Below, one piece after another: positions 3,001-61,564 of a stretch of DNA of 64,000 nucleotides (position 1 is its first letter; the number at the start of each line of letters is the position of its first letter). Source of the stretch: Convolutriloba macropyga (Eukaryota); the NCBI RefSeq assembly GCF_964194025.1, contig NC_134479.1, forward strand, positions 30,442,001 to 30,506,000, read 5' to 3'. The notes under the pieces are model-generated. The model searched no databases, was not told where the DNA came from, and was given only the letters and a program-made list of their open reading frames with translations. The translations under genes were made by a program, and so were the position numbers.

Positions 3001-3720
3001 TTCTTTCATGAATGGTCTCGTCCATCACATAGTGGTGATCACCCAATGCAATCAACTCTGCTGGGATTTGATTCAAGAACTCAGCTAGGTTGAAAACTGT
3101 TTTTATGTTTCTGATTTGGACTGTTTTTTGGATATAATTATTCTCAAAGTTATCTCCTCTCCGAAGAAAAATTTGTGGGTTTCCAAAATAACCTACGAAC
3201 CTAGTCTTTGGGATTCTGTTTGCAAAACTTCAATGTCAATTTTTCCAATGGTATTTTTGCTTTACTTACAATGTTCCCGATGATGTTTTGTTTCAGTGAG
3301 ATTTGCCAAGCTATTGGATACGCTATTTTCACACTTTTATTCTTGCCGCCCTTCATAAAAGCAATGGCTAATTTTGACTTTATTTCAGTTTCCGTTTCGG
3401 ACTCCTGTACCTTCCTCAATAGTATGTTTTCAAACATAAAACCTTCATTCCCGAATCCCGTTAAATTTAACGATATAGCTTCTAGCAATTTTCTACAAGA
3501 TTGACGGTTAAGTGGATAATTGTTGGGATTCAATTGAAAGCTTCCTTGAATAAAAACTGCATCGCTCCACCAACCACTTTTCTTGACGCCACTGACAGTG
3601 CATGTTTGTTGAATTACGCAAAAATTCTATTGGATTCTGCCACTCTCATGAAACAACACGTGTCCGGTAGATATCAGAGAATCATTTTTGTTTTTGTGTA
3701 CAACTTTTTTCTCAAAGAGG
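1..3720 (-). pseudogene. Decayed, unidentified coding sequence (several stop/frameshift-broken reading-frame patches)
   Basis: Minus-strand patches at 3201-3533, ~2900-3190, 2190-2438, ~1317-1960 (coiled-coil-like LQIQEQLKNVQQEKNML...) and 538-834 read like protein but are broken by stops and frameshifts; no motif recognised. Confidence 0.35.
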
Positions 3721-6900: not shown

Positions 6901-9900
6901 TCCTTGCTCAAACTTTTAAAAAGTTTTGACATAAAATTTGTACCCATTTCAATATGCACGTTTGTTGGGCCTTCAAATCGTGAAAACCAACCACCTAAGG
7001 GTTTTTCTGAATTTTTTACTGTTACTCGGCCTTGACATGGTTTCCAGTAGGATTCTTTTTTCTGGACATCTTGTATACTAGAGCTCTGTTTAACCCTTTT
7101 TTGAGCTACTTTGACTTTCACTCCGAAATTTTGTTGTACTGCTGCTCTGTTCTTGTGTTGCAGTTTTTGATTTACTAGACGTCTCCTTCGAAGGACTATT
7201 CAAATTTTTATTGGCATTGGTTGGTTGTGCTGGTTGGGTGGTTGTGCCATTCACGCCTCGATATCAGATTTGGGCTCCAACAAATTTTCATCGGATTGTC
7301 CTCCCTGTTGATCAACTTCGGTTTGAGTTGGGATCTCTTCTGTTTTAGTTTCATCGTCACATACTCCAGTATCCTGTTGCTCGACTGCAACTTCAATCAA
7401 CCCGTCCTCTCTCTCTCTCAACGCTATCAAATCTCTCAGCTTTTTTGTTTCGTTTTGTTTTACTTTTGAGCAAGGTCTGAGTTTCTTGAGTCCATCGTAG
7501 TGCAACTTTTGCTGATTTTGAGTTTTCAAGTCTCCTACGATAAAAAATTAAGTCGTTCACTTTTCGTATAACAGGAGGACCACCACAGAACGTTGATTTT
7601 TTCATTTGCCATAGTTTTAGTGTTGAATTAAACGAAAGGCTTAGTTCCTCCGTTCGGTAATTCGGTCCAACATGCTTATGATCGTGGTAGATTTTTTGCT
7701 TCCTCTGCCCTACCTCCAAGTTTGCTCGTGCTAGTTCTTAGCAAAACTGCTATTTTTCAGGTTACCGATATAATCACTTGCAGTTCCAAAATCTTGGTTT
7801 TGGAGTGTTTTGTACATGCCACCAAAAGGTAATGCACCAAACAACGCACCAAACATATTTCGTAACCCTGTGAACAAGAACTACGACATGCCATGATCAA
7901 TTGAAGATGTTTACTACAGGGGTCATTTTGCTTTCCTACGATTAATTCTCTTCAACCATTCAATTAGTTCTTTCAATGATTGCAGTTCCTTGACTGTGAT
8001 ATGTTGATGTAGAGCTGCGATCAATACCCAATTCCTTGCCCAAACTTTTAAAAAAGTTTGACATAAAATTTGTACCCATATCACTATGCAAGTTTGTGGG
8101 GCCTTCAAATCGTGAAAACCAACCACCTACAAAAGATTTTGCGACTGTTTTTGCTTCTTGGTTTTGCATAGAAACTGTTTCGTACAATTCTGAAAATTGA
8201 TCTCCTATGAGTAAAATATATTTTGACACCATCGCTTTTGCATAAGGTTACCATGATATTTAACGCCACCTGTCAAAAAAAATAGGTCGGTTCCCACACT
8301 GTTAGTGGTCGCCTGTGAGTTTGTTGAGGTTTTTTCAGCTTTGTTGACCCTTATTCACAGTTTTACTGGCTTAGGCGATTACTCTGTCCATCCAGCTCTG
8401 CTTCTGGGTAATGATTGCTCCTAGTTCAGTTGAAGAAGCATCTGTTGTCAAAGTGAAAGATTCGGTATCATACGGATAACCCAAAAATGGGTGTTTTCTG
8501 TAGTTTTAATTTAAGTTGGTCCACAGTTTTGCTGCATTCTCTATTCCAAATAAATTTTTCAGGTTTGTTCAACAAACGGTACACTGGTTCGAAAATTTTC
8601 CAAAAAACTGCCATGGATCGAAGATTAAACCAGTCTAGTCCAAAATTTGCACGGAGCTGTGTCATATTTGCCGGAGGTTTCATTTCACTTACTGTGGCTA
8701 AGATTTCAAGATCAGCATCCACGCCATCGTTTTTTATAATGTGACCTGGAAAATAATTCCGTTTTTGATAAAAGCGGCATGTTGAGCCTTTGAATATCAG
8801 ACCGGCTTCTTTTATACGACAAAGCAAAAATTCAAGATTTGACAATAGTTTGCCTAAACAACTAACAAAATTGATTATGTTGGCAAAAAATATCAAAACT
8901 ACGTAATATGAAATTCCCGCCGGGACTGATTCCATCAAATTTTAGAAAACTCTTGGCGCTGAGGTTAAACCCATTGGCAACATCTACGTTTTCTACAAAC
9001 CCCTAACATCAATGAACGCTGTCAGGTTTTGTGACTCTTCCCCTGAGGTCATTTCAGACGATATTTGAAAAGTAAACACTCTCCACCAATCAGTCTGTTA
9101 CATCGTTTACTACAGGGGTCATTTTGCTTTCCTATGATAAACTCTCTTCAACCCTTCACTTAGTTCTTTCAATGATTGCAGTTCCCTGACTGTGATATGT
9201 TGATGTAGTGCTGCGATCACTTCCCAATTCCTTGCTCAAACTTTTAAAAAGTTTTGACATAAAATTTGTACCCATTTCAATATGCACGTTTGTTGGGCCT
9301 TCAAATCGTGAAAACCAACCACCTACAAAAGATTTTGCGACTGTTTTTGCTTCTTGATTTTGTATAGGAACTGTTTCGTACACTTTTGAAAATTGATCTC
9401 CTATGAGTAAAATAAATTTTAAACCATCGCTTTTGGGTAAGGTTACCGTGATATTTAACGCCACCTGTCAAAAAAAAATGGTCGGTTTCCACACTGTTAG
9501 CGGTCGCCTGTGAGTTTGTTGAGGTTTTCTCTCCATTGAGCACTTCCACACTGTTAGTGGTCGCCTGTGACTTTGTTGAGGTTTTCTCTCCATTGAGCAC
9601 TTAACGCAGCTCTTTATCTAACCGGATACATCGCGCTTCATTCCAACACATTAAAAACGTTCTTGAACTCTTTCAAGACTCTTTTGCATTCTTTTGTGCC
9701 CCCATGGATTCATGTAAGAGTGACATCTATTTTTATGATTGGTGTAAAACTTTTTGCGGGACTTGGTAGATGTCTTCGGGCAATTTTTAATGCCAAAGCA
9801 GCCCTTGACTGACATACAAATTTTAAAACTCTGTCTAGAGTTTCCATGTTGTTTTTGAAGCCCCAGTCAATTCTTTTTTTTCAGTTTGTTTCTTTTGCTC

Positions 9901-46700: not shown

Positions 46701-49700
46701 TTTTTGCACTATCGCCCAAAATAAATAATTGAGTGATACGACGATTTATTTGGAGCGATGGTTTTCTCCTGTCATATTATGAATTGTGGTACCATTAGCC
46801 TCTATTATTAGCCATTTCTGTCTTCTTGAGAGCACTGCTATGCATAGTTGTTAATGCGTTTCAGATTATTTCAAAAATTATTTTTAATTCCAAAGATTAA
46901 GTTAAATTTTAATTTTTACTATCGTTGGGGGTGTGAATGATAAGTGTTTAAAGTGTTTAATACTCACCGAAAATGAAGCTGAAAGCTAAGATATACAACA
47001 AGCTCTGCATGGCCATTATTGAGGTTGGATATGTTCATTAAGTTCAGTAGATTCAGAAAGTAACCTTTGAAATGTCTCGTTTCTTAATTATTATTAGTTC
47101 ATCCCCTTTTGCTAACAAAAGCAAAGTTCACCAAGGCATTTCGAATAATTTAGTACAATGAAATGAAAAGGCAGTGTTTGACAAAAGTATTTGCATACTT
47201 TGAGGTACTAAAGTTCTGAATGTCTAAGAAAGGTAGCTGATAGGTTTTAAGAATAACGCACAGGAGCGCTAATATGCTTGCGGACATTGTTCCAACTCAT
47301 TTAAAAAAGTATGTAAATATAAAACTTGTTCAACACACATTTCTATGATCGGCTACGCATTGAAAAATAAAAAAGATAGACTCCTGAAGGTCAGTATCAT
47401 AGTTGCATTCTTTTTTCTAGCAAAAACTACTATTGAAAAATATTTGAAATAACTCTTGTTTCAAAAGAATACCTTTTGCCATTCGCCGTCTTGCTGCCTT
47501 CAATATGACCCTGGGTCCCTTATCGTAAGAAGTAAAGAAATGTGTCAGAGAAAAATCTTGATGGAGAAACTGGCTTTTATGTAAATAGTAGTCGAACAAA
47601 AAATATGTTTTCATAGACACTATGAGTAAAATTTTTAACAGACTGTAAAGCACGCCCGTTTTAATAAAGGAAACTGCCGGGAACATGCGAGCTGAAATTA
47701 ATTAAAATGGATTCAGTTGTTGAAACCATGTCCCACTGTTGAAAAAAATCGAAGAACTGCTGTGTTCGACGTGTTGACTGTTCTAAAGGTCTAACTATTC
47801 CTGAAGCCTGAAATTTTCTATACATATTGGTCGTATGGGTGAACCAATACCTTTTATATTTACCTTCTACCTTTTTTAAAGGCAAAAGTCATCGATCGAC
47901 GAAAAGTTGCTCAGCAAAAAAAATGTGAGGCCTGCATAAAGTTCCCAACTATATTGGGAACTTTATAAGTTGGAACCATAAGTTCGGTAAATTTTTTGTA
48001 TCTGAAAAATACCTAACATAGTAATTATGTCACAAATTCGGCTCTTGTTGATCGATCTTTCGACTGAAACAAATTTCCCTTGAACACAAGTTGAAGTGAA
48101 TTGAATGTTAGAGAATTGAATTATTAAATGTGGTGAGATGACTGATTTTGTTTCAGAAATGCGGGAGTTCGCGAGGCATACGAAAGCGTCCTCGAATTTG
48201 AAGTTAGTCTTGTATCATTTTTGCAACTGTATCCATAAAAATATAAGGGGTTTTAATTTCACTTTTCGGAGCTCACAATTTTCTTTACACGGCGAAAGTA
48301 AATCTGCAGTCCTCTAAATTTGAACCATTTTTTTTAACTATTGGAACTTAAGTGATATCTTCAGACGTTGCTCTGGCGCCGGGTCTTTAATGGAAATTTA
48401 TGCAGTTTTCAACGATGTGGCTGTGTTTAAAATCCATGTGATAAATTAGTGTTTTGAATAATATATTTTCTTGAATGATCTGATGCTTGGCATTTAACTT
48501 CTTCGACCCGTGTTCCAACTAAGTTAACGATTTAGGACGAGCTGAATAACTTTTCCGCGGAAGTCGACAGGCAATGTACGAAAGGATCGTCAGTGAAAGA
48601 ATCGGGAAGCTCCTATGAACCAATTCAGGGCGAGAAACTTGACGGATCCTTGCGATTGTGCATGCTTACTGGGCCTAATCCGTTAGTAGCCTTGTCAAAC
48701 TAACAGAAATGACTTCCGAGGATTTTACAAGCTTGTTGTCAATAGTTTCTGTTGAGTTTTAGCGGCACTTAGATCTCGACCTTCAACAAGATGAGTTTTC
48801 TCTAAACTCATGTAATCTGGTTTGAGGAAACGTTGCATTATCAAATACCGTTAATTTATTTTGCTGTGCTCTTGAGTCCCATGACAAAAAGGCTAATAGA
48901 AATTTTTTGTCAATTTTATCGTTTCGTTTTTAAATTTAGCGACGTAAAACTTCAATCTATTTCATCAGAGGACTTAGCTATTTTATTAGGATGCCGATAA
49001 GGTTGAGTTGCATTAATTTGAAATATTTTGGGAGCAAAAATTTAGCAAGGCGAAAACCCGCAATAGATTGATCATTGTTTTCGTTTGAGAAAAGAAAACA
49101 GATTCTATTTGTTTAAATATGTTTTTGGTCCATGCACAATTTTGTTATTTAGAGGCGACGAAATTGAAGTGTCACTGTCACAAATCTTCAGTGATTGTCG
49201 TATCCTAAGGAACCTCTTTGGGGAACCGAGCGGCGGTCAAGGTGACTCTATAGACTGGAAACAAACCGAAGGACAAAAACCCAGTCTATGCATTGATAAC
49301 AATAGCGTTCAGAGATCTAGCGAAGATAGTCTGAATGTTTCTGAATCGGTTTATGAAGCTGATGATAATATCTCCGGCCAGGGGAAATCACTGAGAGCTG
49401 AGAATCGTGATCAAGATGAAGTTCAAGCAACGTCTGAAGTGTTTACGTTGTTTGTGCTCCTCCGGCACTTTGCCTGACTACCGTGACGTAACCACATCCA
49501 CCATTTGATCGCGCCAGAAGCACAGGTATAACTAATTTATTTTTTGGCAAAACTCTGGATTACTACCTCGTTTACGTGATCGAAATAGAACTTATGGTGA
49601 TCATCTGTACTTTGAACACCTGTTTGCTCTGAACAGAAATGTTGGCAATTTTTTAGTGTTATATTTCTGATGTAATTTTTTGAGGTAATAGAGCTTTACC

Positions 49701-52700
49701 AGTCTTTTTTTCACCCAAACGCCAAGAAGGCATAAAATCATGGTGTAAATTTTGACAGTTTTAGACAACCTACACGCCCTCCGCATTTTACCTCCCTTTC
49801 TTGCATAATGAGCCTGAATGACTTTTTGTCTTATTGTACGCTTAACACGTCAAACATTTTCAAGTTTTTAAACTGACAGCTTCTGCTTAGAACATATATA
49901 TGAAAAAAGAATTCCTGTCATCTCGAAGTTGCTGGGTGAATGAGCGGTCTGTATAAAGGAACGATCAAATGTTCTTTTAAAAGCAAGATAAGTTTTTGCC
50001 TGTCAAGATAACAACTGGGAAAAGTCGATTTTGTTTTGAAACAAAATCTGCACCCTCATTTTTAACATTGACAATAGCAGATTACGCATTTGTTCTTTTC
50101 TTATAATGAAGCAGTTTTATTTCAAGAACTTGAGAGCAATTCGCCCGACGTTAGTCGGTATGTTCTAATATCTGTGCACTTTTTCCGACTTCAATGAGAT
50201 GTAAAATTTATGTCGTGGTTTTTGTTGCTCTGAAGTATAAAAGAAGCGAAAAGTGAGCTTTTGAGACGTGAAATCTTCTCGCGCTGTATTAAGTGGTTTG
50301 ACCAAACTGTGTTTCAACCATTTTTCAATTTTGGAGATTTTTGCTCGTGCAAAAATTTAACCTGTTTTTGCTTGTTAATAGCCCCCTTCATCTTCTCAGC
50401 CGGCTATTATAGCGCTCCTATTTTTTTTACAATTCAAAGAATTTGAATTGTATTGGGGCGCTGTCTTTTTTTAAGATCTGTTCACACATTTTCATGATTT
50501 TTGACGTCAAATTGGAGTAGTGATTTTGGTCACGCCGAAACAGGAAATGGAGCGAAAAAGCGACTGGTTTTGCGGCGTGAATTTTTTTCGCTCTAATTTT
50601 GAAGTAGAGTGCGAAAATGGTATTTGAACAAAAATTCGGTTTCTCGGTAGTGGTTTTTTGTTCACATGCGGCAATTTCACTGATTTTTAATGTTTTGCGA
50701 TTTTTTGGATCGGATTTTTTTCTAAATGGTTTTCCCAATCCATTGACAGCTTATTCTAGGTCTAGTTTTTTGTTTGAAATAAATTTTCATTTCTCGCTAG
50801 TGGTTTTTTTGTTCACATGCGGCATTTTGACTTTGATTTTTTGTTTTTTTTTATCTGATTTTTAAAAAATGGTTTTCTCATTGCACTCATAGTCCATTTT
50901 AGGTCTAGTTTTTCTGTTTAGTCAATGAAAATTCTTTGAATTGTACGTCAGGACTCGTCCTGCTATGTTTTTTTTACTTCGTCGAACAAAAGAAATGTTT
51001 CGCTTTACCTCATTTTGTCGCTTTTTCAACATTTTGCGTGAAATATTTTTGACTTCTCTAGGCTAGTTTCTCTCTTCTCTCATTCTGTTAAAAGTGATTT
51101 TGAACATCAGTTGCTCAGTAAAGCAATTCAAAATGAACAGAGTCAATATAAAAAATTGAAGTCAGAAACAGAAACGGGATAAACCCATAAAGCCCAATTT
51201 TAGATGCCCGCTATTTGAACGTCGTTCCTATAAGTCTTAGTTAACATCTCTAATGCTTACTGGTTATGATTGCATCCCCTGTAGCCTCTCTCTAAGAAAC
51301 AGAAGTATGTTCAACTACGAAATACCATCAAAATAAATCGGACTTAAAAAATGTTTTTGTACAAAAATCTTTTTTTTTTCAATATCTTCTATTCTTTCAA
51401 TCCCAATCATGCTTATTGGAATCAACGACGGCTATTTTTCGGCAATCTGCCGGGTATGTTTCTGATAAGTGCATTCAATATTTTTTGGGGTATTTGAGAA
51501 CTTGAACTTCTACGTAGTTTTTTGTTCCGTAGTCTTCGGTTTGTTTTTTACTAATACAATTTTTTTTCTTCGTGCCTCACCGTAAACCTGAATACATCAG
51601 TTTTGTTCACCTTTTCTGACCATTCTAACTGCTTTTACGTATCTGTCCGTCATTGGTTAAACTCAGTAGCTTTGTGTTGTAGCTGAAGTCGGCGACGATT
51701 TTTTAAATATCATAAATGAAATTCGAATGAGTTTTGGAAAAATAGTTATCTTCGCATCTCGGTTTACTCATTTGCTCCAGGAGACAAACGCTTGGGGTGA
51801 CACTAATTGTTATTGTCAAGTGGATTGTTAATTCTCAGTGTTTTAATCGGTTTTCCTCCTCAAATGAAAGTTGAAGTTTTTGCCTCACGTCTACAAAATT
51901 TTGCGACCTGATGTCTATAATCGAGTTTCCGACTAATATCCTTATTCTAAGTTCCGACTTATCTTACTCTATAAATGACTTTTTTTACTTCAATGTCAAG
52001 GTTCTCAAGTTTTTCAAGGTCAACACAGGACTCTTATGTAACGAAGGCTGTTACTAATAAAGTATCGCAACTAAAGAAATAATTAGGAGTGGTTTTCCAA
52101 AATAAATCGTTTACTAAGAAAATTCCGAATTTTTTAAATAGGTTTTTTAGATGGCGTCAACGACTCATCTACTATTCTGTATCTATATTCTATGGCAAGC
52201 AAATCTATTTCGCAATGTAAAAGGAAGACCAGGATGAGGATGAAGACCAAGTCTACCCTCCTCCGCCTGGCGGTTTGAACCCCCCCCCCCCTCTTCCTCT
52301 CTCGTCCAACCCCACCACCCTACATGCTTGCATCTCTGAGCCCCAGCTGTGTACTACCGAAGCCAAACGCTCGTTGGTCGTTTGAGAGCAATTCGCTCGA
52401 CGTAGACGGTTATGTTTGATAACTATGATCCTACGCGTTCTTGGATTTTAGCGTTAGGCATTCTGACTTGATTTCATCAAGCGATGTTTCATGTTTACAG
52501 GCCATATGGCGTGATCTGAGGGTGCGGTTAGTCATTGTGTCTTTTGGATCACCGAAAGGTCTTAGACTGTGGCAAAAAGACATGGAAATCCCAGACGCAA
52601 ATGTTTACGGATGTACTGTACAAAGACTCGAAAAGAATGATCTAGAAGTTAAGACAGAAAACAAAGCTGGTCAAGACGACAGAATCATTCTATGCACAGA

Positions 52701-55700
52701 CCAGCCACGCGTGGTGAGCGGATTTTCTTGAGAAATGGGTTTTTTCTATCTCTTAGTAGTTTATACTCTGTATTAGATCAAATTAAGAGATGAAATGAAT
52801 TTTAACTCAAAATGACGATATTACTCTACTTTGTAATAAAAGAAGTTTTTAGATCTAGTAACAGAACTTCCATTGTTTACAATTGTTGGTTAAGAATCAG
52901 TTGTGTGTTCGACTATTTGCATAAATTGGCTAATAAAATTTATTTTGCTTTATTTACCAACTGCATCTGGTCACTCACTGCTCGTCCTGACAATTTTTTG
53001 AACTTTTTTCCGTCTATTGTGCCCGTTATATTAGTGGGCATATAACTTGCTACCCCACGAGCACGTGCTACCTTTGTACATAGTAACGTTCTATATAGCT
53101 CAAGGGGAGGCAAAACAGTACAGACCCGTCTCTCTTCATGATTTCAGAGTAGAGAATAATTTCTACCAATTTGAGTAATAAAAAGACAAGGAGGCTCGTT
53201 AATATGCGTTCGCACATGATATTCGGACCCGAGCTCATCTACATTTTTGAATTAATTGACAACCAAAAGAAGAGATAACACAAATACATGTTTGAGTTTA
53301 AAACAATCGTTACACAACCTATTACAGCCTCATTACAGCGCCAATCAGATCTGACATTAAAGAGACTACGAGACGAAAAAAAAACAAACAACAAAATTAG
53401 CAAAAACAAAAATTTCACGGCAAAAACAATATCTAAATTTGGAAGCACATTGTAACAACGTCATAATGCAGTCAGATAAAACCTTAACTACTCAAAATCA
53501 CTTTCTCCTATCTATACAACAGATGGAAAGTTTTTTAAATGAGACTAAGTAACAAGTCAACAACGAGAACGAACAATGAGGCGAAATTCAAAAATTAATC
53601 AACATTTTTTAAACCAAGAAATTTCAAGTCTTAAAAATCATCAGTTTTTAACCAACTAATCCTTGATGAGTTACTAAAAAGTCATTACAAAACCAAGAGG
53701 ACTTGTCTTTGGGTAGACTAAATCATATAAATGAACTAAAGAAAATCTTAAAAAATACAAACGTTTTGCGAAAGCACAAACTTTTGCTACCATTAAAATC
53801 ATTAGCTATTATCTGATTATTGTATTTTTAATTCAATTCTTATTTCTACTAATTCAGCTGAAGGAATTATACTGAGAGATTAAATAAGTGTATTTGGGCG
53901 ACATTTGAAAACCACTGGGATCTATTACTACGCGATCGTTCTGAAAGAGGAGAAAAAGGAACGCAAAAGCAGCAAATTCAAGAAAAAATTGAGCGAGAAA
54001 TGTGTCGAAGGCATTAAAAATTGAATTTTTAACTAAAAACTTTTGAATGTTCAATAAATTTTTTAACAGCAAGCTGATATCTCTTTTTTATCAATATAAC
54101 TTCAGAAAATCAAATCTGAGGTAATACATTAGAACCACGAAATTTTTGAGAAAACTCGGGGATATCAAGGCCATTAAATTCATTAGCTTTCTTTCAACGG
54201 AAGCCACTGAATACGCTAAATTATGCCTCGATTGGACAACATGTTTGTTTGCCATTGATATTTCCTCAATAAGACCTCACAACAAGTTTTTGACGATGAA
54301 AACGACAACAAAGACAGGCAAAAACCAAAAATTCAGTAGAAAAGTGCCAGAAGAAAGTGTCGAAGCAATTTAAATCATAATCTCTTCTCCGAAAACTTTA
54401 TCTATGATCCGTTGAACGTCTTCCCTAAACGAATGAGAACTATTAGTAATAGTATGATGTGATAAGATTTCAAAAGAATCCAAAAATAAAAATTTATCCG
54501 AAAATTTACATTTATATGAAAACTCGTGGCATTGAAGTTTTAAAACTAATAGGTATAAGATAAAACCGCTAACCAGATTAATTTTGGCTGCAGTAGGAAA
54601 GAAAGCCTGTAGGTACTAAGACTGACTAAAAGTTCACGAAAAAGGTTTAGGATTAGTTAATTTTCAAAAAATATTTCAAAAAACTGTTTTTAAAGTCTTT
54701 AACAGTCATTAATCTCAAAAGCACAGTCATTAAAGTCATGTTTTTCATGCATAGATAATCAATAAGACATCACAATAGGTCTCAAGACTACAAAAACAAC
54801 AACAAAAGCAATCGAGAACCAAAATTCAGTAGAAAATGCGAGAAGAAATGTCGAAGCATTTAAACCATTAGCTTTTCTCTGAAACCTTTTATCTGTGAGC
54901 GACTGAATGCCTTCTCTAAGCCAATGGGATTAAAATAATATTTGGATAATGTGTATAATATTTGGATAATGTGTGTAATATTTGGATAATGTGATAAGAG
55001 TTCAAAAGTAACCAATAATACAAAAATATCCAAAAAAAATCTTTAAAAACTTTGAAATCTTGTGTGATTGAAGTCATATAACTAAAAGTTAGAAGATAAA
55101 AGCGCTGACCAGTTTAATTTTAGTTGCAGTAGAATGCAAATGGGTCCTGTCAATACTGCGACTCACTAACAGTTCACGAAAAAAGTTTAAGATTGGTTAA
55201 TGTTCGAAAAAAATATCGAAAAATTATCTTTAAATTCTTAACAGCCATTAAATTCAATAGCTTTCAACGGGGTCAATAAATATGCGCAAATATGACCCGA
55301 TGTGAGTACAGGGATGTTTTTGATGCATAGATGATCAATAAGACATCACAACAAGTCTTATGACTATGAAAACGAAAACAAAATCAGGCAAATACAAAAA
55401 ATTCAGTAGAAAAGTGCGAGAAAATGTCGAAGCAATTCAAACCATAAGATTTTCTCTGAAAACTTTATCTGTGATCCACTGAACGTCTTCTTTAAGCTAA
55501 TGAGATTAGAACAAAATTTGGATAATGTGATTAATATTTGGATAATGTGATAAGAGTTCAAAAATAACCAATAATACGAAAATATCCAAAAAATTTTTAA
55601 AAAGTTAAATCTTGTGTCATTGAAGCCATATAACCAAAATTTTGAAGATAAAACCGCTGACCAGATTAAATTTATTTGCAGTAGAAATTAAATGGGTGCT

Positions 55701-58700
55701 GTCAATACTGAGACTGACTAACAGTTCACGAAAAAAGTTTAAGATTGCCTATTATTCAAAAAAATTTTCGAAAATTTATCCTTAATTTCTTAACAGCCAT
55801 TAAATTCAATAACTTTCAACGGAAGTCAACGAATACGCTCAAATATAACCCTATGGGAGTATGGGGACGTTTTTCATGCATAGGTGATCAATAAGACATC
55901 ACAACAATTCTTATGACTATGAAAACGAAAACAAAATTAGGCAAATACAAAAAATTCAGTAGAAAAGTGCGAGAAAATGTCGAAGCCATTCAAACCATAA
56001 GATTTTCTCTGAAAACTTTATCTGTGATCCACTGAACGTCCTCTTTAAGCTAATGAGACTAGAACAAAATTTGGATAATGTGATTAATATTTGGATAATG
56101 TGATAAGAGTTCAAAAGTAACCAATAATACGAAAATATCCAAAAAATTTTTAAAAAGTTAAATCTTGTGTCATTGAAGCCATATAACCAAAAGTTTGAAG
56201 ATAAAACCGCTGACCAGATTAAATTTATTTGCAGTAGAAATTAAATGGGTGCTGTCAATACTGAGACTGACTAACAGTTCACGAAAAAAGTTTAAGATTG
56301 CCTATTATTCAAAAAAAATTTCGAAAATTTATCCTTAATTTCTTAACAGCCATTAAATTCAATAACTTTCAACGGAAGTCAACGAATACGCTCAAATATA
56401 ACCCTATGGGAGTATGGGGACGGTTTTCATGCATAGGTGATCAATAAGACATCACAACAATTCTTATGACTATGAAAACGAAAACAAAATTAGGCAAATA
56501 CAAAAAATTCAGTAGAAAAGTGCGAGAAAATGTCGAAGCCATTCAAACCATAAGATTTTCTCTGAAAACTTTATCTGTGATCCACTGAACGTCTTCTTTA
56601 AGCTAATGAGATTAGAACAAAATTTGGATAATTTGATTAATATTTGGATAATGTGATAAGAGTTCAAAAATAACCAATAATACGAAAATATCCAAAAAAT
56701 TTTTAAAAAGTTAAATCTTGTGTCATTGAAGCCATATAACCAAAAATTTGAAGATAAAACCGCTGACCAGATTAAATTTATTTGCAGTAGAAATTAAATG
56801 GGTGCTGTCAATACTGAGACTGACTAACAGTTCACGAAAAAAGTTTAAGATTGCCTATTATTCAAAAAAATTTTCGAAAATTTATCCTTAATTTCTTAAC
56901 AGCCATTAAATTCAATAACTTTCAACGGAAGTCAACGAATACGCTCAAATATAACCCTATGGGAGTATGGGGACGTTTTTCATGCATAGGTGATCAATAA
57001 GACATCACAACAAGTCTTATAACTATGAAAACAACAACAAAAACAAGCAGAAACCAAAAATTCAGTAGAAAAGTACGAGAAAATGTCGAAGCCATTTTAA
57101 CCATATGGTTTACTCTAAAAACTTTATCTGTGATCCACTGAACGTCTTCTTTAAGCCAATAGGAGCTATCAGTTTGAGGATAATGTGATAAGGTTTAAAA
57201 GTAACGAATAATACGGAAATGTCAAAAATTTTTTGAAATCTTGTGTCATTGAAGTGTCATTATAACTAAAAGTTAGAAGATAAAACCGCTAGTCAGATTA
57301 AATTTGGTCACAGTAGGACGGAAGAGGGTGCTGTGACCACTGAGACTGACTTTTAGTTCACGATAATAAGTTTATGATTGGTTATTGTTCAAAAAAAAAT
57401 TTTTCGATATATTTTTAAAGTCCTAACAGCCATTGGCTGTCCACTCAAAGCACTAGATATGTTCACCTAATGCTCATTACGGAACAAATTGCACGGTTAG
57501 TCAATGAGTTTATGCCATAAGATTCCAGAAAAATAGTAAAACCTCAAAAAGAAATAAAGAAATTCAAAATTTCATTTAAAATTACGAGTCGAAGCCAAAA
57601 AAAAACATGAGCAATTCCTTGAGAACATTTTTTTTGCTCATTCGACTGTAAAGGAGGTTTGTCATTAACGGAACCGGGATGTGAAAAGTGACTTGTCTCT
57701 AGGTGACTTAAAAAAGCAAAAAAAAGTAGAAAATTTTTATAGAAAAAGAGCTCTCAAAGAGTTTTTGATAGTGAACTTCCCTATGAAACCAGAAATAGTC
57801 TTTTTAATCGCTTTTAGTCTATTAGGAACACAAATTTGGTTCATTTTTTGGCGTGAAATTCAATTTTGAAATACTATTTTAGAAAATATCTTAATTTGAA
57901 GAAAAATCGCTTTAAAAGTAAACAAATATCGAGTGTTCACACAAAACTTCAATCCTCGATAACTCCTCGAAAAAAACGGAAATCAAAAAAATCTGTTTAA
58001 TTTTGAATTCTACGCTGGACCAGATTTTTAATGATACCACTCACATTTCTCTGCGATGAATATATCGATCGGCCAAAATTGTCTGAACAAAAAAACCCAT
58101 TTTAGTATATAGTTCCTCCCCCCCCCCCCCCCGCAAGTGGGGTCGGAACAAAAATTTAACTTACTTATTGGAAGCAACGTAGTTAAGGGATATTCGGTGT
58201 TTTAGATCTACAATTGGTTGGGTCTCCAGGTGTCATTTCGGAAAGTGTGGGTTAGTGAGACGATGAAATACTATGCGGGACAGAAACAACAGGGTGTGAA
58301 GTTCCCTCGACCGTTCGAGAACATCGAAGATGATACACTTCAGGTTCTGCCATACTTAATGGTGTTTTGATGCTACCGTTAAGTTTAGCAGTGCTACAGA
58401 TCGCTTTTGTAGGAAAGCATCCAGAAATGAAATTGTTTGTGCGGTATAAGATCAACTAGTTCAAAAGTAACTTATGAACATATATTAACAGAATTATTAA
58501 GAAAAGCATGAGAATATGCCATTGAACGAAAAGCTGGGACCATTTATGTCCTACTTATACGTATAAAAAAGAACAGCCTAATGTGAGTTGTCCATATACA
58601 TTAAATTTTAAAATGATACTATGATTTGATTCATATGGACTGACATCTAAGTGTATAACCTTTGGATGTAGTCGTGCAATTTGCAGCTTTGAAAAAAGTT

Positions 58701-59083
58701 AAGCAGACGACGCTTTGCAAATAGCGATCATTGTACAAAGCTGAAGTTTTGAAAATATAAAAATTTTGATGAAGCAAAATTTTATTCATTGGTACTAAAC
58801 TCAAAAGATGAAGCCGTAATATGATCCAAAGTTTTTGTAATAGTTAAAGAGCCGAATTCGTCTAGATCTGGGCAATATCTTAACCTGCTCTATTATGTTA
58901 TGGTTCAAACTTTAGATGGCTGGTGACTATTTGGTTGACCAGAATGGCACTCTGATTCTGTCTCACCCTCAGAAAACAGTTGCTGATAGACCGACTATTG
59001 ATGACATTGTCATGAGCGTCAAGAGAGCACTTGACTCGAAGAGGGATCAGAATGTGAGAAAAGAGATGGGCGCTGCTTCTTAA
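16689..59083 (+). CDS. SELENOL: Selenoprotein L (thioredoxin-like fold, UxxU); spliced CDS join(16689-16779,16853-16940,17004-17057,48157-48202,48536-48681,49153-49525,52501-52713,58206-58343,58916-59083), 1317 nt, 438 aa, Sec250 and Sec253
   Basis: All 8 introns are GT-AG with matching phases (1,2,2,0,2,0,0,0). The only in-frame stops are two TGA in LLRHFA-U-LP-U-RNH. SelL/AhpC-TSA-type motifs LVIVSFGS, D.PRVIYNWLGL, EDDTLQMAGDYLVD and DRPTIDDI are present, and a SECIS lies downstream. Confidence 0.93.
16853..16940 (+). CDS. SELENOL: SelL coding exon 2 (C-SEENSLEVMKSLGPFMFPIMVAYADMFT-K)
   Basis: Acceptor ttttatAG, donor AA|GTTAGT; ..AYADMF.. resembles the SelL N-terminal domain. Confidence 0.85.
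17004..17057 (+). CDS. SELENOL: SelL coding exon 3 (K-LEVDSASSFEAVVSKQY-R)
   Basis: Acceptor tgtttAG, donor AG|GTACGC; phase 2 joins exon 4 to give ...KQYRNAGVRE... Confidence 0.85.
17300..18380 (+). mobile_element. Old, heavily decayed LINE (CR1/L2-like) RT fragment
   Basis: QGSLLGRLIFC..NDIP...YGCAGDAKF (17930-18040) is a degenerate PQGSxLGPxLF...YADD RT core. Confidence 0.65.
19502..19760 (-). repeat. 3' LTR of BEL/Pao element
   Basis: TGTCAC...GATGACA; about 6 substitutions versus the 5' LTR; preceded on the minus strand by the purine-rich tract AAATGGGGCCGGCTA (19761-19775). Confidence 0.95.
20240..25940 (-). pseudogene. BEL/Pao gag-pol polyprotein with two nonsense codons (25860-25862, 24846-24848) and one frameshift (~23235)
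   Basis: ATG at 25940; gag FDGDPLSW and Cys-His knuckles (CFNCFGSHHVQQC, CRSADCGKKHHTMLH); protease YLDNGS; RT VYMDDLY; RNase H FTDAS; integrase HSG..C..C, GLDFIGP, SDNG, WERL. Confidence 0.95.
26020..26410 (-). repeat. Degenerate tandem array of ~11-bp AAACCTACCTG units in the BEL 5' leader
   Basis: About 12 exact CCTACCTG plus about 10 variants; higher-order ~140-bp repeat (26160-26250 versus 26300-26390). Confidence 0.9.
26890..26901 (-). promoter_or_regulatory. Primer-binding site (tRNA-Lys type)
   Basis: TGACGCCCAACG, 3 nt inside the 5' LTR; 11/12 match to the tRNA-Lys PBS TGGCGCCCAACG. Confidence 0.75.
26905..27163 (-). repeat. 5' LTR of BEL/Pao element
   Basis: Direct repeat of 19502-19760, followed by TSD ACACT. 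Confidence 0.95.
28885..33100 (-). mobile_element. Decayed CR1/L2-type LINE (ORF1 remnant, APE endonuclease, RT) with internal duplications
   Basis: APE motifs ICGDFNI and TDHYA (31876-32217); RT motifs NFRPIS, QYGFR, FLDLKK, GLPHCSVLGPLLF, LYADDT (29474-30269); AT-rich tail at ~28890. The 30240-31910 segment is present in 2-3 overlapping copies. Confidence 0.88.
31865..40758. repeat. Near-perfect tandem duplication of a 4447-bp unit (31865-36311 / 36312-40758)
   Basis: Six ORFs recur identically at +4447 (e.g. 31876/36323, 35126/39573); only one mismatch spotted by eye (34340 A versus 38787 G). Confidence 0.97.
33519..36311. mobile_element. Truncated duplicate of the Helentron-like (HINE) element at 37966-40854
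   Basis: Same left end (TTGTTCCGACCCCCACTTTAGTGGG); lacks the hairpin end because the duplication breakpoint cuts it. Confidence 0.7.
37966..40854. mobile_element. Non-autonomous Helentron-associated (DINE-1/HINE-like) element, ~2.9 kb
   Basis: Subterminal inverted repeat TTCCGACCCC (37970-37979) / GGGGTCGGAA (40809-40818); perfect hairpin TAATGTGCG-AA-CGCACATTA (40821-40840); end ...CCTTGT into a T run; no TSD; both ends match 53186-58154 in reverse complement. Confidence 0.78.
43123..43330 (+). mobile_element. tRNA-derived SINE
   Basis: A-box TAGCCGAGAGG (43131-43141), B-box GTTCAATCC (43175-43183), unrelated body, 3' hairpin GTGGC-TAAA-GCCAC and A tail. Confidence 0.7.
43541..43670. repeat. 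AT-rich minisatellite, ~28-bp unit (ATAGCATATAAATATATAAAATATAAAT) x ~4.5
   Basis: Direct reading of tandem units. Confidence 0.9.
44325..45400. mobile_element. ~1.1-kb non-coding interspersed repeat (MITE-like), copy 1
   Basis: Shares GATCTGTTCACACATTTTCATGATTTTTG...GTCACGCCGAAACAGG with 50375-51480, 61565-62460 and 62460-62830; AATAGC(C/T)GCC / GGCGGCTATT inverted motifs near the ends. Confidence 0.7.
45949..46082. repeat. 69-bp tandem duplication containing a 13-bp-arm palindrome
   Basis: TTATTACATTTCT-GG-AGAAATGTAATAA at 45955-45982, repeated at +69 with one mismatch. Confidence 0.9.
47400..48060 (-). mobile_element. Highly decayed piggyBac-like transposase fragment
   Basis: EQLFVD..LLPLK, PIR..GFR and F.DYY remnants in the order expected for piggyBac LSVDE.M.PFKG / KPIRFGFK / FDNYF; frameshifted. 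Confidence 0.45.
48157..48202 (+). CDS. SELENOL: SelL coding exon 4 (R-NAGVREAYESVLEFE)
   Basis: Acceptor tgtttcAG, donor GAA|GTTAGT; VRE..E..LE.E pattern. Confidence 0.88.
48536..48681 (+). CDS. SELENOL: SelL coding exon 5 (DELNNFSAEVDRQ...LTGPN-P)
   Basis: Acceptor gatttAG, donor CC|GTTAGT, phase 2 matches exon 6. Confidence 0.88.
49153..49525 (+). CDS. SELENOL: SelL coding exon 6, containing both Sec codons (TGA 49475-49477 and 49484-49486)
   Basis: TTT GCC TGA CTA CCG TGA CGT AAC CAC = FA-U-L-P-U-RNH; acceptor ttatttAG, donor CAG|GTATAA. Confidence 0.95.
50375..51480. mobile_element. ~1.1-kb interspersed repeat (MITE-like), copy 2
   Basis: Collinear similarity to 44325-45400. Confidence 0.7.
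52501..52713 (+). CDS. SELENOL: SelL coding exon 7 (AIWRDLRVRLVIVSFGSPKGLRLW...CTDQPRV)
   Basis: Acceptor gtttacAG, donor GTG|GTGAGC; VIVSFG motif. Confidence 0.93.
53186..58154. mobile_element. Helentron-associated (DINE-1/HINE-like) element, ~5 kb, carrying an internal satellite; opposite orientation to 37966-40854
   Basis: Starts ACAAGGAGGCTCG + degenerate hairpin + TTCGGACCC; ends GTGGGGTCGGAACAAAAA (subTIR 58139-58148); 57920-58150 is the reverse complement of 37966-38190. Confidence 0.78.
54150..57435. repeat. Satellite array, ~553-bp unit x ~6
   Basis: Anchor TCAATAAGAC at 54266, 54759, 55335, 55888, 56441 and 56994 (spacings 493, 576, 553, 553, 553); internal subrepeat TAATATTTGGATAATGTG. 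Confidence 0.95.
58206..58343 (+). CDS. SELENOL: SelL coding exon 8 (IYNWLGLQVSFRKVW...EDDTLQ)
   Basis: Acceptor gttttAG, donor CAG|GTTCTG; Y..LGL..S..KVW motif. Confidence 0.93.
58916..59083 (+). CDS. SELENOL: SelL terminal coding exon 9 (MAGDYLVDQNG...DRPTIDDI...AAS*)
   Basis: Acceptor actttAG; Q|MAGDY matches the family QxGGDF motif; DRP motif; TAA at 59081-59083. Confidence 0.93.
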   Translation: MAGDYLVDQNGTLILSHPQKTVADRPTIDDIVMSVKRALDSKRDQNVRKEMGAAS

Positions 59084-59287
59084 ACTCGGAAGTCTGAATT
59101 TAAGGACAGGATTGCAGACGTAGTTATTTATCTAATCACTGCAGAATAGACGAAATCAATGCGAAAGCAACCATTTTTTTCTCGTTTTGTAGTTGACGTG
59201 TTATTTTTAAAAATCGAAAAAAAAACGAAATGAATTCTGATAGTTCACTGGGACATTGATTGTCTTATGCCGTATTTTTCTCCTGAA

Positions 59288-59415
59288 ATGTGTTAATATA
59301 GCGAATGACGACTGTGTGGAAAACCAATAAATCAGCTCTTTTCAGTTTGTCCAATCAAAATTGAGCATTCTGTTTTGAGCGTGGATCTGCCAGTCTGACA
59401 TGTTTTATAGCACAT
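59288..59415 (+). promoter_or_regulatory. SECIS element (type II-like, long apical extension)
   Basis: Helix I ATGTGTTA(59288-95)/TAGCACAT(59408-15); core ATGAC(59305-09)/TGAC(59396-99); helix II GACTG-T-GTGGA(59310-20)/TCTGC-CAGTC(59386-95); unpaired AAA 59321-23; ~205 nt after the stop codon. Confidence 0.85.
59326..59331 (+). promoter_or_regulatory. Candidate polyadenylation hexamer AATAAA inside the SECIS
   Basis: The only AATAAA I found between the stop codon and ~60770; U/GU-rich sequence follows at 59368-59384. Confidence 0.35.
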
Positions 59416-61564
59416 ATCAATTTATCTTTGTTGTGGACCAATTTATGAAGATTGCGAGATATAAACTCACACGTGATTTATGTAAATTTAAATTATTTTA
59501 AATGTAATCAGTGTTTAAGTAGATTTAATCGGATTTTTACCCCATTGTATTTAAGTTGGATCCTTCCTATATTACATACCATATTGTGCTGTTATCTCTC
59601 TAATATCAAAAATTATTCTTATCTATGCCTCACTAAAATTTTACTTTTTTTACAACTGAAGTTTTCAGCTAAATCAATTCGGGAGTGTTGCGTAGGCTTT
59701 GCTAGTGCTCTTACTGGTTCTAAAATATTGTCGTATTCAGTTTTGTCTCAATTTTCAGGGCAGATAAGTTACCATTGATGCGTGAAGGAATCATTTAAAA
59801 GATGGCCTGATGCTTGTATTGTTGAACAGGTGTACTTTGCCTGTGTTTAATCAAAAACATCAAAGAAGTCAAGACCCAGTTGACAGTCTTTAAAGGGAAA
59901 ATCAAACTACAAGATGCCACAATGAAGAAGCATTCATGCGCAATGTGTGCCAAAAGAAATCTTAGGTTTGAAGAATTGAAGGACATCAACCACTGGGCCG
60001 CAAAGTTGGTGATACGGCAACTCATTTAGTAAGACCTAAAGACGTAATACGATCAATCCGATCCGAGTGAACTGGACCCTTTAAAGGGAAGCTTATGAAG
60101 CTAGGTTGTAATTTTTAATAGCTGCCTTCATGTTAGCAGGCTATTATTGCCCTCATATATTTTTTAATAGCCGCCTCTGAACGTCTATTAATTAGACGTC
60201 TCCTTTTTTACAATCATATGATCTTCACGCTTCCGGATTTTTCACATCAGTGAGAAGTCAATTAGAGTGGTGCTTTTAGTTACGCTGATGTACTATAGGG
60301 AGCTAAAATTGGAGACATGGTGTGAAGCAGCCCCCCCCCCCCCCAACAGCAGCTCACTTCACCCCCCCCCCTCTCCTGCACATCGTTCAGGCCGTAAGCA
60401 CCCCGTTTCTGATTTCTTATAAGTGAGCGAGCAAGAAAACCGCAAGTTCAGGGATTGAATATACTTTGAAAAATTTGTTTCAATGAACAAAATTGAATAG
60501 CAGAGAAAAGACAGTGTTTCTTTTGTTCATGCCTTCTTTTGAAACAGCGAGAAATGTACCAAGCAATTTTTCTTTGAATTTCGACAATATTGCAGAAAAT
60601 TGACAATTTAATTTGAGTTTTTAAATTTATTTCGAAATTAGAGATGCTTTTGTGCTTTTTTTGTGTTGTGCAAATTAGTTTGAGCAATGAAGTTGGCTCG
60701 ATTACTTGAAATATTGTTTTCACTTTGTATTTGTAAAGAGAGGGAAGCAAGAAAACCGGAAGTTCAGGAGTGAATAAAGTGTAAAAAAATGGTTTTGGTG
60801 AACAAATTCGGAGAGCAGAGAAAAGAAAGAGTGGTTCTTTTTTTCATGCTTTCTTTTAAAGCAGCGGCAGAAAAGTAGGCGTGACAATTTTTTTTGCAAA
60901 GCGTGCTATTTTTCTTTGTTCATGTGGCTTTTCAAGCTTTTTTGTTTGAAAATTCTACGTCTGATTGGTTGTAATAGTCTTAGGGTATATTTTTTGGCTG
61001 TTTTGATAGCGTTTCAAAAGTTTTTGTTAATTAAACAAGTTTTATAATACTTTAATGGTTTTTCAACGAGTTCTCCGGTTTTATGTCTTTAGCTATTTTT
61101 GGTCCAGTATTTTTTATTGCTTTTTACTTGTTGCTGAATGGAAGCATAATGCTCGTGGGCAGTTTCTTTTACAAAATAAAAACACGTTCTTTGGTACCAA
61201 GCAATTTTTTGTCTTTGACTAAATTTTGACTGCAAAATGCAAAAAAAATGAAATTTTTCTTCATTTCTTTAGAGTTTTTCGCTTAAATTCAAAATTAGAG
61301 ATTTTTTGTGCTTATATTGGCTCGTCTGATTTTGTGCGAGCAATGAAGTAGTCTCAATTACTTGAAAGTTTGTTCTCTTTGTTTTCGTACTTGAACAAAA
61401 TAAAAAATGTAGAATTTTTTTCTTTTAATTACTTTAGTTAAATTTCCTTTTTCATTTAATATAGTCTTCTCTCTTATCTTCACTGCCATCAGACATCAGA
61501 AACAAGTCTTTCGACAGACTGCTTCTTGGCAAAGACATCTTTGAGTCTTTTTTTTTCGGAATTC

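What the first reader, a model, noticed from the sequence alone, without database searches (positions are those of the whole stretch)
59288..59415. SECIS with an exceptionally long (~62-nt) apical extension serving two UGAs
Seen: canonical helix I, AUGA/GA core, ~10-bp helix II and AAA, but 59324-59385 replaces the usual short mini-stem. It closes with CCA/TGG and can form alternative helices (GCTC/GAGC twice, TCAAAA/TTTTGA). I found no second SECIS. Established: type II mini-stems are normally a few bp, so default SECIS searches may miss this one. Inference: the extension may aid decoding of two UGAs three codons apart, or carry regulation.
Basis: partly seen in the sequence, partly recalled or inferred. 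Interest (0 to 1): 0.72.

Follow-up and report, generated by a model that had tools for sequence, protein, structure and literature searches.

The report
Selenoprotein L SECIS with inserted hairpin
This is the genuine selenocysteine-insertion RNA signal of a selenoprotein L gene, and its odd 60-base tip is a hairpin inserted only in this lineage, because relatives with the same two-selenocysteine motif have ordinary short tips.

Summary
Window 59288-59415 folds as a type II SECIS: AUGA 59305-08, a 10-bp helix II, unpaired AAA 59321-23 and a 3' GA at 59397-98. Its apex (59324-59385) is 62 nt instead of about 10-20 nt.

It lies 222 nt after the stop codon of a selenoprotein L gene. That gene has a Prx-like2 (AhpC-TSA_2) fold and the motif RHFA-U-LP-U, with TGA codons at 49475 and 49484.

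A covariance model built only from SelL SECIS elements of other organisms picks this site as the best hit in the 64 kb (26.9 bits, E about 1e-3). The model places a 52-nt insertion in the apical loop. All 10 helix II pairs covary across 8 sequences.

Eight other SelL loci have short apices. They include the acoel Symsagittifera roscoffensis, a polyadenylated metatranscriptome mRNA and fishes; six show the same U-LP-U motif, and the two fish contigs hold only the last exon. Two other SECIS elements of this same genome, from a TR-like gene and a GPx gene, are also short.

The extension is therefore a gene- and lineage-specific insertion that folds on its own (z = -3.0). It is not needed to decode two UGAs.

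It most likely is a tolerated extension of helix III. It does expose an AAUAAA hexamer followed by a U/GU-rich stretch. No RNA data exist to test whether that hexamer is used.

The scan had already noted this hexamer on this same stretch (s1-259027).

The parts
49475..49486 (+). UxxU redox motif: TGA-CTA-CCG-TGA (U-L-P-U) inside ...LLRHFA-U-LP-U-RNHI...; this exon ends at 49525 (donor GT at 49526)
   Evidence: The same motif occurs in L002, L007, L013, L014, L006 and L008.
52501..52713 (+). SelL coding exon (AIWRDLRVRLVIVSFGS...TDQPRV), phase 0 at both ends
   Evidence: tblastn with the L002 protein gives 52% identity.
58206..58343 (+). Penultimate SelL coding exon (IYNWLGLQVSFRKVW...EDDTLQ)
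   Evidence: It is 73-74% identical to P0001/L002.
58916..59083 (+). Last SelL coding exon (MAGDYLVDQNG...), stop TAA at 59081-83
   Evidence: phmmer against P0001 gives 53% identity, E = 4.8e-6. tblastn.
59288..59302 (+). SECIS helix I, 5' strand
   Evidence: pair probability 0.53-0.99.
59305..59308 (+). SECIS 5' core AUGA (kink-turn quartet)
   Evidence: These columns are invariant in the alignments of the other SelL SECIS elements, and the model aligns the window to them.
59310..59320 (+). SECIS helix II, 5' strand (U59315 bulged)
   Evidence: pair probability 0.97-1.0. Covariation.
59321..59323 (+). Unpaired AAA (AAR motif), 12 nt after the core
   Evidence: unpaired probability at least 0.98.
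59324..59385 (+). 62-nt apical extension: the CCA/UGG stem shared with relatives plus a lineage-specific inner hairpin of about 52-55 nt
   Evidence: (52-nt insertion relative to the model). No other copy in the genome.
59326..59331 (+). AAUAAA hexamer, mostly unpaired, followed by a U/GU-rich stretch at 59339-59350
   Evidence: Also noted earlier by the scan as s1-259027.
59386..59395 (+). SECIS helix II, 3' strand
59396..59399 (+). SECIS 3' core U-GA-C. The C after GA is shared with the L002 and L008 SelL elements; the full UGAC form is shared with the TR-like and GPx SECIS of this genome.
59402..59415 (+). SECIS helix I, 3' strand

Best explanation
**What it is.** The element is the orthologous type II SECIS of a selenoprotein L gene. 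SelL is a Prx-like2 protein with a U-L-P-U redox motif.

**How it works.** As in other eukaryotic SECIS elements, the AUGA/GA kink-turn and helix II recruit the SECIS-binding protein. Together with the unpaired AAA they direct Sec insertion at both UGAs, about 730 nt upstream in the spliced mRNA.

**What is different.** In this lineage about 50 nt were inserted into the apical loop, between the conserved CCA and UGG of the mini-stem. The inserted RNA folds on itself and extends helix III. The core, the helix II length and the AAA bulge are left untouched.

**Most likely reading.** The extension is a tolerated, probably near-neutral addition in the part of the SECIS that constrains recoding least. 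It is not a device for decoding two UGAs.

**Shown:** homology of the SECIS, the place and size of the insertion, its fold, its absence from relatives and from two other SECIS elements of this genome, and an intact, constrained coding sequence after the UGAs.

**Inferred:** that the element still works, and that the insertion is functionally neutral.
For: **Gene identity**
- The exons after the UGAs match P0001/L002 at 52-74% identity.
- P0001 passes the Pfam AhpC-TSA_2 cut-off: 33.2 bits against 27.
- RHFA-U-LP-U is conserved in six other loci.

**SECIS homology**
- Model R1 was built from five SelL SECIS elements without the window.
- It hits 59291-59412 over its full length: 26.9 bits, E about 1e-3, the best hit in the window, with a 52-nt insertion in the 6-nt loop.
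- Across 8 sequences all 10 helix II pairs show changes on both sides. 86.8% of cells are paired, against 31-53% when the partner is slid. 0 of 500 shuffles reach the observed score.

**Short apices elsewhere**
- UGA-to-GA spans: L002 45, L006 (S. roscoffensis) 44, L008 42, L003/L004 44, L005 44-45 read from the sequence, L013 37, L014 35. L007 is also short, about 43 nt as read from the model alignment.
- In the same genome the TR-like SECIS spans 39 nt and the GPx SECIS 50 nt.

**The extension itself**
- It is a stable, self-contained hairpin: z = -3.0, pair probabilities 0.77-1.0.

**Constraint on the coding sequence after the UGAs**
- dN is about 0.24 and dS is saturated; dN/dS is about 0.16.
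- Third codon positions are 44% identical, first and second positions 75-83%.

**Literature**
- The apical loop is a minor determinant of recoding efficiency (PMC2761289).
- Long mini-stems exist in functional SECIS elements of Ostreococcus, Chlamydomonas and Dictyostelium (PMC2375036).
Against: - There is no RNA evidence for this species. Only DNA runs were found, so neither expression nor the 3' end of the transcript is known.
- No functional test of Sec insertion was possible.
- The age of the insertion is unknown, because no closer relative is in the databases. The constraint measured against L002 may therefore largely predate the insertion.
- The exposed AAUAAA followed by a U/GU-rich stretch could cut the SECIS in two.
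- The E-value of the model hit is only rough (shortened calibration).
- Only two other SECIS elements of this genome were examined.
Confidence: 0.7

Rival explanations
1. Alternative-polyadenylation switch. The insertion brought a usable poly(A) site (AAUAAA at 59326-31 plus the U/GU-rich 59339-50). Cleavage there would remove the 3' half of the SECIS. It would give SECIS-less mRNAs that terminate at the first UGA, so SelL output would be tuned or reduced.
For: - The hexamer is mostly unpaired: probability 0.89-1.0 for 5 of its 6 bases.
- It is the only canonical AAUAAA between the stop codon and 60773.
- A related mRNA (L002) ends about 15 nt after an AUUAAA, so this group appears to use canonical signals.
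Against: - An AAUAAA in a 62-nt AT-rich stretch is expected by chance about 6% of the time (my own estimate from base composition).
- The coding exons after the UGAs are intact and constrained, so SECIS-containing transcripts must be made.
- There are no RNA data.
- A variant hexamer, UAUAAA at 59460, lies just downstream of the SECIS.
Confidence: 0.12
2. The insertion has weakened or inactivated the SECIS. SelL in this lineage would then be made poorly, or be on its way to loss or to conversion to Cys.
For: - The AA-to-GA distance is about twice the maximum seen in standard SECIS descriptors (PMC2375036).
- No relative shares the insertion.
- The age of the insertion is unknown.
Against: - Both TGA codons and all four downstream reading frames and splice sites examined are intact.
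- The core, helix II and AAA are unchanged, and the insertion folds away from them.
- Long mini-stems occur in SECIS elements of known selenoprotein genes in other eukaryotes (PMC2375036).
Confidence: 0.1
3. One reading: the long apex is an adaptation that helps the ribosome decode two closely spaced UGAs.
For: Only the co-occurrence of both features in this one gene.
Against: - Six other SelL genes or mRNAs with the identical U-LP-U motif use short, ordinary SECIS apices.
- Decoding of both SelL Sec residues by one SECIS is described without such a feature (PMC3316567).
Confidence: 0.03
4. A chance look-alike or an assembly artefact.
For: Rfam SECIS models give no hit.
Against: - Rfam also misses the canonical orthologous SECIS elements.
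- The independent model hit and the covariation support it.
- Its position is right, just after the stop codon of a UxxU gene.
- Contigs from four DNA runs of two samples are identical to the window here.
Confidence: 0.02

Closest known systems
Eukaryotic type II (form 2) SECIS element
   Same: - AUGA/GA kink-turn quartet.
- Helix II that places an unpaired AAA 12 nt after the core.
- AAA in a bulge followed by a further helix (helix III).
- Helix I below an internal loop.
- Location in the 3'UTR of a selenoprotein mRNA.
   Different: - Helix III plus loop is 62 nt, against about 10-22 nt in the relatives and in two other SECIS elements of this genome.
- AA-to-GA is about 75 nt, against the 15-39 nt of the SECISearch descriptor.
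- The base after the 3' GA is C rather than the A/U consensus. L002, L008 and this genome's TR-like and GPx elements share that C.
SECIS elements with long mini-stems (Ostreococcus, Chlamydomonas, the Dictyostelium deiodinase-like gene; PMC2375036)
   Same: A type II architecture whose apical mini-stem is much longer than usual.
   Different: - In Ostreococcus it is a genome-wide lineage trait of protists. Here it is a single gene in an animal-type genome whose other SECIS elements are short.
- Here the origin as an insertion into a short ancestral apex can be seen directly from the orthologues.
Selenoprotein L (SelL; UxxU Prx-like protein of fish, invertebrates and marine bacteria)
   Same: - Two Sec residues separated by two residues in place of the CxxC of a Prx-like2/AhpC-TSA_2 fold.
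- One SECIS serves both.
- The C-terminal GGDF-type motif region is shared.
   Different: - The window's own exon pieces are too short to pass Pfam on their own.
- Membership therefore rests on the orthologue P0001 and on the conserved motif.

Membership tests
Eukaryotic SECIS, type II | AUGA ... GA non-Watson-Crick quartet | tested here: met
   AUGA at 59305-08 and G59397-A59398. These columns are invariant in the alignments of the other SelL SECIS elements, and model R1 aligns the window's bases to them.
Eukaryotic SECIS, type II | Helix II that sets an unpaired AA(R) 10-13 nt after the core | tested here: met
   10 bp plus one bulge. AAA starts 12 nt after the core and is unpaired with probability at least 0.98. 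All 10 pairs covary.
Eukaryotic SECIS, type II | AAR in a bulge followed by a mini-stem (helix III) and a small apical loop | tested here: met
   CCA/UGG closes a further helix. The helix-plus-loop is 62 nt rather than about 10-20 nt.
Eukaryotic SECIS, type II | AA-to-GA distance within the standard descriptor (15-39 nt; PMC2375036) | tested here: not met
   About 75 nt (59321-23 to 59397). The relatives are about 25-30 nt. This is a limit of a search tool, not a demonstrated functional limit.
Eukaryotic SECIS, type II | Lies in the 3'UTR of a gene with an in-frame UGA | tested here: met
   It lies 222 nt after the TAA at 59081-83 of the UxxU gene. That it is part of the 3'UTR is inferred; there are no RNA data.
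Eukaryotic SECIS, type II | Rfam SECIS_1 (RF00031) gathering score | tested here: not met
   No hit even at E <= 10. The same search also missed the canonical SelL SECIS elements of six other loci, so it is uninformative.
Eukaryotic SECIS, type II | Binds SBP2 and supports Sec insertion | not testable with these tools
   Needs a binding assay, a reporter or 75Se labelling.
Selenoprotein L | UxxU motif at the CxxC position of the redox fold | tested here: met
   LLRHFA-U-LP-U-RNHI at 49475-86. It is identical in six other loci.
Selenoprotein L | Prx-like2 / AhpC-TSA_2 domain | tested here: inconclusive
   The window's exon pieces alone give no Pfam hit. The orthologue P0001, 52-74% identical to those exons, scores 33.2 bits against a cut-off of 27. 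32 of the 34 homologues found carry PF13911.
Selenoprotein L | A single SECIS serves both Sec codons | tested here: met
   There is only one credible candidate downstream of the stop codon.

The most novel reading that the evidence does not exclude
The inserted hairpin is a functional module, not neutral. Its exposed AAUAAA plus U/GU-rich stretch would form a poly(A) site inside the SECIS. The choice between folding and SBP2 binding on one hand and cleavage on the other would then decide whether the mRNA can decode its two UGAs. That would be a built-in switch between full-length SelL and a truncated product or decaying mRNA.
Probability: 0.1. Interest if true: 0.7.

Novelty: new member of a known kind. 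Interest (0 to 1): 0.38.

Why it matters
- **A natural insertion experiment.** About 50 nt added to the apex of an otherwise unchanged SECIS, in a gene that still looks constrained, suggests how much the apical region can tolerate.
- **A concrete case that search tools miss.** Standard SECIS descriptors (AA-to-GA of at most 39 nt, and filters against long apical loops) would skip a real selenoprotein gene here.
- **Annotation.** SelL genes are split at the UGA in current annotation. In S. roscoffensis the gene is called as two uncharacterised proteins.
- **Evolutionary reach.** The U-LP-U SelL is extended to an acoel-related lineage.
- **Limits.** The mechanism itself is ordinary. The proposed link to decoding two UGAs does not hold.

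Tried and rejected
- **Rfam cmscan** at gathering and at E <= 10 on the window and on six related loci gave no SECIS hit anywhere, including the canonical elements. The tool is insensitive here.
- **Genome-wide RF00031 search** of the window's genome scored only 129 of about 21,900 candidates and found none. Uninformative.
- **Pfam on single exon pieces:** no hit because they are too short.
- **The search for homologous proteins with the last exon:** no candidates, because of the length window.
- **Protein atlas on one exon:** no family.
- **Sequencing runs:** only DNA runs of the same organism. Nothing can be said about expression, splicing or 3' ends.
- **U7 snRNA lead.** There is a weak U7-like match inside the extension (14.3 bits, E = 3.4). 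The genome's best U7 candidate (28.7 bits, below the cut-off) shares nothing specific with the extension. Rejected as chance.
- **Origin of the insert.** No other copy was found in the 1.18-Gb genome. No internal tandem or direct repeat explains it. The origin stays unknown.
- **A 35-nt GT...AG segment (59345-59379) as a mini-intron.** Considered and set aside, because this gene's introns are 572-5492 nt. Untested without RNA.
They are not favoured in the ensemble.
- **First crude pattern scan.** It was replaced by the fold-based scans.

Full report
**1. The observation**

- helix I: 59288-59302 with 59402-59415
- AUGA at 59305-08
- helix II: 10 bp, 59310-59320 with 59386-59395, with U59315 bulged
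- an unpaired AAA at 59321-23, 12 nt after the core
- CCA/UGG (59324-26 with 59382-84) closing an imperfect hairpin made of GCUC/GAGC, CAG/CUG, UGU/GCA and CAAU/AUUG
- a 3' core U-GA-C at 59396-99

The whole element folds at -37.3 kcal/mol (z = -2.86 against 200 shuffles). The 61-nt apex alone folds at -15 kcal/mol (z = -3.0).

In the Boltzmann ensemble of 59250-59450:
- helix II pairs have probability 0.97-1.0
- the helices of the inner hairpin have 0.77-1.0, and CCA/UGG 0.69-0.90
- the AAA is unpaired with probability at least 0.98

**2. The gene it belongs to**

The + strand upstream carries a multi-exon gene:
- an exon ending at 49525 that contains TGA-CTA-CCG-TGA at 49475-86, read as LLRHFA-U-LP-U-RNHI
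- exons 52501-52713 and 58206-58343
- a last exon 58916-59083 with stop TAA at 59081-83
- two further upstream exon matches near 48152-48220 and 48536-48670

An exhaustive phmmer search with the last exon found three relatives. The best is P0001, encoded on a 1466-nt polyadenylated metatranscriptome contig, L002. P0001 passes Pfam AhpC-TSA_2 (33.2 bits, cut-off 27). It is 52-74% identical to the window's three post-UGA exons.

L002 carries the same FLRHFA-U-LP-U-RNHI. So do L007, L013 and L014 (all transcripts), L006 (chromosome of the acoel Symsagittifera roscoffensis, GCA_963678635.1) and L008.

This is selenoprotein L. Its two Sec residues, two residues apart, are known to be inserted with a single SECIS (PMC3316567). 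The gene is single-copy in the window's 1.18-Gb genome.

Over 88 aligned codons after the UGAs, window against L002:
- dN is about 0.24 and dS is saturated
- dN/dS is about 0.16
- third codon positions are 44% identical, first and second positions 75-83%

The part of the protein that can only be made by reading through both UGAs has therefore been under purifying selection.

**3. Is the element the real SECIS?**

Rfam is no help. It reports nothing in the window. It also reports nothing for the plainly canonical SECIS elements of six related loci.

I therefore used three independent lines.

(a) A fold-based pattern scan, allowing up to 150 nt between the two core halves, returns the expected single SECIS in L002, L006, L008 and L003. 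In the window it returns 59305 as the only AUGA-type candidate between the stop codon and 61000. It is also the best of 9 candidates on both strands of the whole window.

(b) Covariance model R1 was built from five SelL SECIS elements of other organisms, without the window. It hits 59291-59412 over its full length with 26.9 bits and E about 1e-3, the best hit in the window. It aligns GCGAAUGACGACUG...AAAACC and UGGAUCUGCCAGUCUGAC to the consensus. It places 52 extra nucleotides where the model has a 6-nt loop. The held-out elements of L007 and L013 were found too.

(c) On the 8-sequence alignment all 10 helix II pairs show changes on both sides. 86.8% of cells are paired, against 31-53% when the partner is slid by 1-3 columns. 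No shuffle out of 500 reaches the observed covariation.

The element is therefore the orthologue of the SelL SECIS, not a look-alike.

**4. The extension is lineage- and gene-specific**

Distances from the 5' UGA to the 3' GA:

| Locus | Span (nt) |
|---|---|
| L002 | 45 |
| L006 (S. roscoffensis) | 44 |
| L008 | 42 |
| fish L003/L004 | 44 |
| L013 | 37 |
| L014 | 35 |
| L007 | about 43, short, as read from the model alignment |
| window | 91 |

L005 was located only by eye in the sequence. AUGA at 453-456 and GA at 498-499 give about 44-45 nt.

- In S. roscoffensis the apex is AAAA-CCAU-GUUUUU-AUGG.
- In L002 it is AAA-CCU...UGG with an 11-nt loop.
- The window keeps AAAA-CCA...UGG but has about 50 nt in between.

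Two other selenoprotein genes of the same genome have ordinary apices:
- a TR-like gene ending ...GGGA-U-G-stop, SECIS span 39 nt (L016)
- an intronless GPx with NTASK-U-GK, SECIS span 50 nt (L025)

The long apex is therefore not a genome-wide habit like the long mini-stems of Ostreococcus (PMC2375036). It is one insertion in one gene.

Its source is unknown:
- there is no second copy in the genome
- there are no internal repeats
- a faint U7-like match is chance

DNA contigs from four runs of two samples agree with the window letter for letter.

**5.

Six other SelL genes or mRNAs with the identical U-LP-U motif use short apices. The extension therefore cannot be required for decoding two UGAs three codons apart, and that inference is not supported.

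The most likely reading is a tolerated insertion. It sits distal to every element known to matter (quartet, helix II length, AAR bulge). It folds on itself, so these are undisturbed. Chimera experiments on human SECIS elements found the apical loop to be a minor determinant of efficiency (PMC2761289). Long mini-stems occur in functional SECIS elements of some protists (PMC2375036). That the element still works is inferred from the intact, constrained reading frame, not shown.

**6. What remains open**

The insertion contains AAUAAA (59326-31). The hexamer is largely unpaired and is followed by a U/GU-rich stretch. It is the only canonical hexamer between the stop codon and 60773. The related mRNA L002 ends about 15 nt after an AUUAAA.

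Cleavage at this site would halve the SECIS.

No RNA run of this organism could be found, so this cannot be tested here. I rate it at about 0.1. A recently acquired, impairing insertion is a further rival at about 0.1, because the age of the insertion cannot be determined without closer relatives.

**7. Comparison with what is known, and novelty**

By function the element is an ordinary type II SECIS of a known selenoprotein family. One SECIS for the UxxU pair is textbook for SelL.

What is unusual is quantitative. The AA-to-GA distance is about 75 nt, roughly twice the 39-nt ceiling of the SECISearch descriptor (PMC2375036). It is of the kind SECISearch3 filters out as "apical loop too long" (PMC3753652).

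I file it as a new member of a known kind, with an extreme but precedented long mini-stem. Interest is moderate to low. Its value is as a natural insertion experiment, and as a warning for selenoprotein annotation.

Noticed in passing
L006:1-8847 (S. roscoffensis OY783236.1): The public annotation splits SelL at the first UGA. An upstream 'gene' of 157 aa ends at 3645, exactly at ...LLRHFA-TGA. LOC134841739 (136 aa, 'uncharacterized protein') is the post-UGA fragment. The canonical SECIS lies at about 8884-8930.
   Followed up: partly
window:54700-57200 (intron between exons 52501-52713 and 58206-58343): The same about 46-aa ORF pattern recurs at 55342, 55895, 56448 and 57001, a period of 553 nt, so this looks like a tandem repeat. 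DNA read depth over 57000-58287 is hundreds to tens of thousands of times the single-copy level, so the intron carries high-copy repeats.
   Followed up: no
window:32400-41500: Identical translated stretches recur 4447 nt apart on both strands (for example 33866/38313 on + and 36862/32415 and 40549/36102 on -). This suggests a tandem duplication of about 4.4 kb.
   Followed up: no
window:4400-9600: Near-identical stretches occur at 4445/7478 and at 5282/8316/9511. This is a further repeated unit of about 3 kb.
   Followed up: no
L016 (G000:C2:41987759-41991085, - strand): A thioredoxin-reductase-like gene sits in one long open frame. Its tail ...SGCGGGA-TGA-GGT-TAA (U-G-stop) is not the usual GCUG. 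A short type II SECIS lies about 120 nt downstream.
   Followed up: partly
L025 (G000:C5:60998082-61001399): An apparently intronless GPx gene has an in-frame TGA (NTASK-U-GKATENF). A SECIS starts at locus position 2059. Its 3' core UGAC is the same as in the SelL and TR-like elements.
   Followed up: partly
window:58118-58133: A run of about 15 C, next to repeats that assemble poorly. Contigs of the DNA runs break at 58122, and C-run length differences are seen at 60330.
   Followed up: no
L003:312-386, L005:439-513 (fish SelL): The fish SelL SECIS elements have no AA at the usual position of the unpaired AAR. L003 has CC there; L005 reads CACAC with no CC doublet. The invertebrate SelL elements have AAA.
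   Followed up: no
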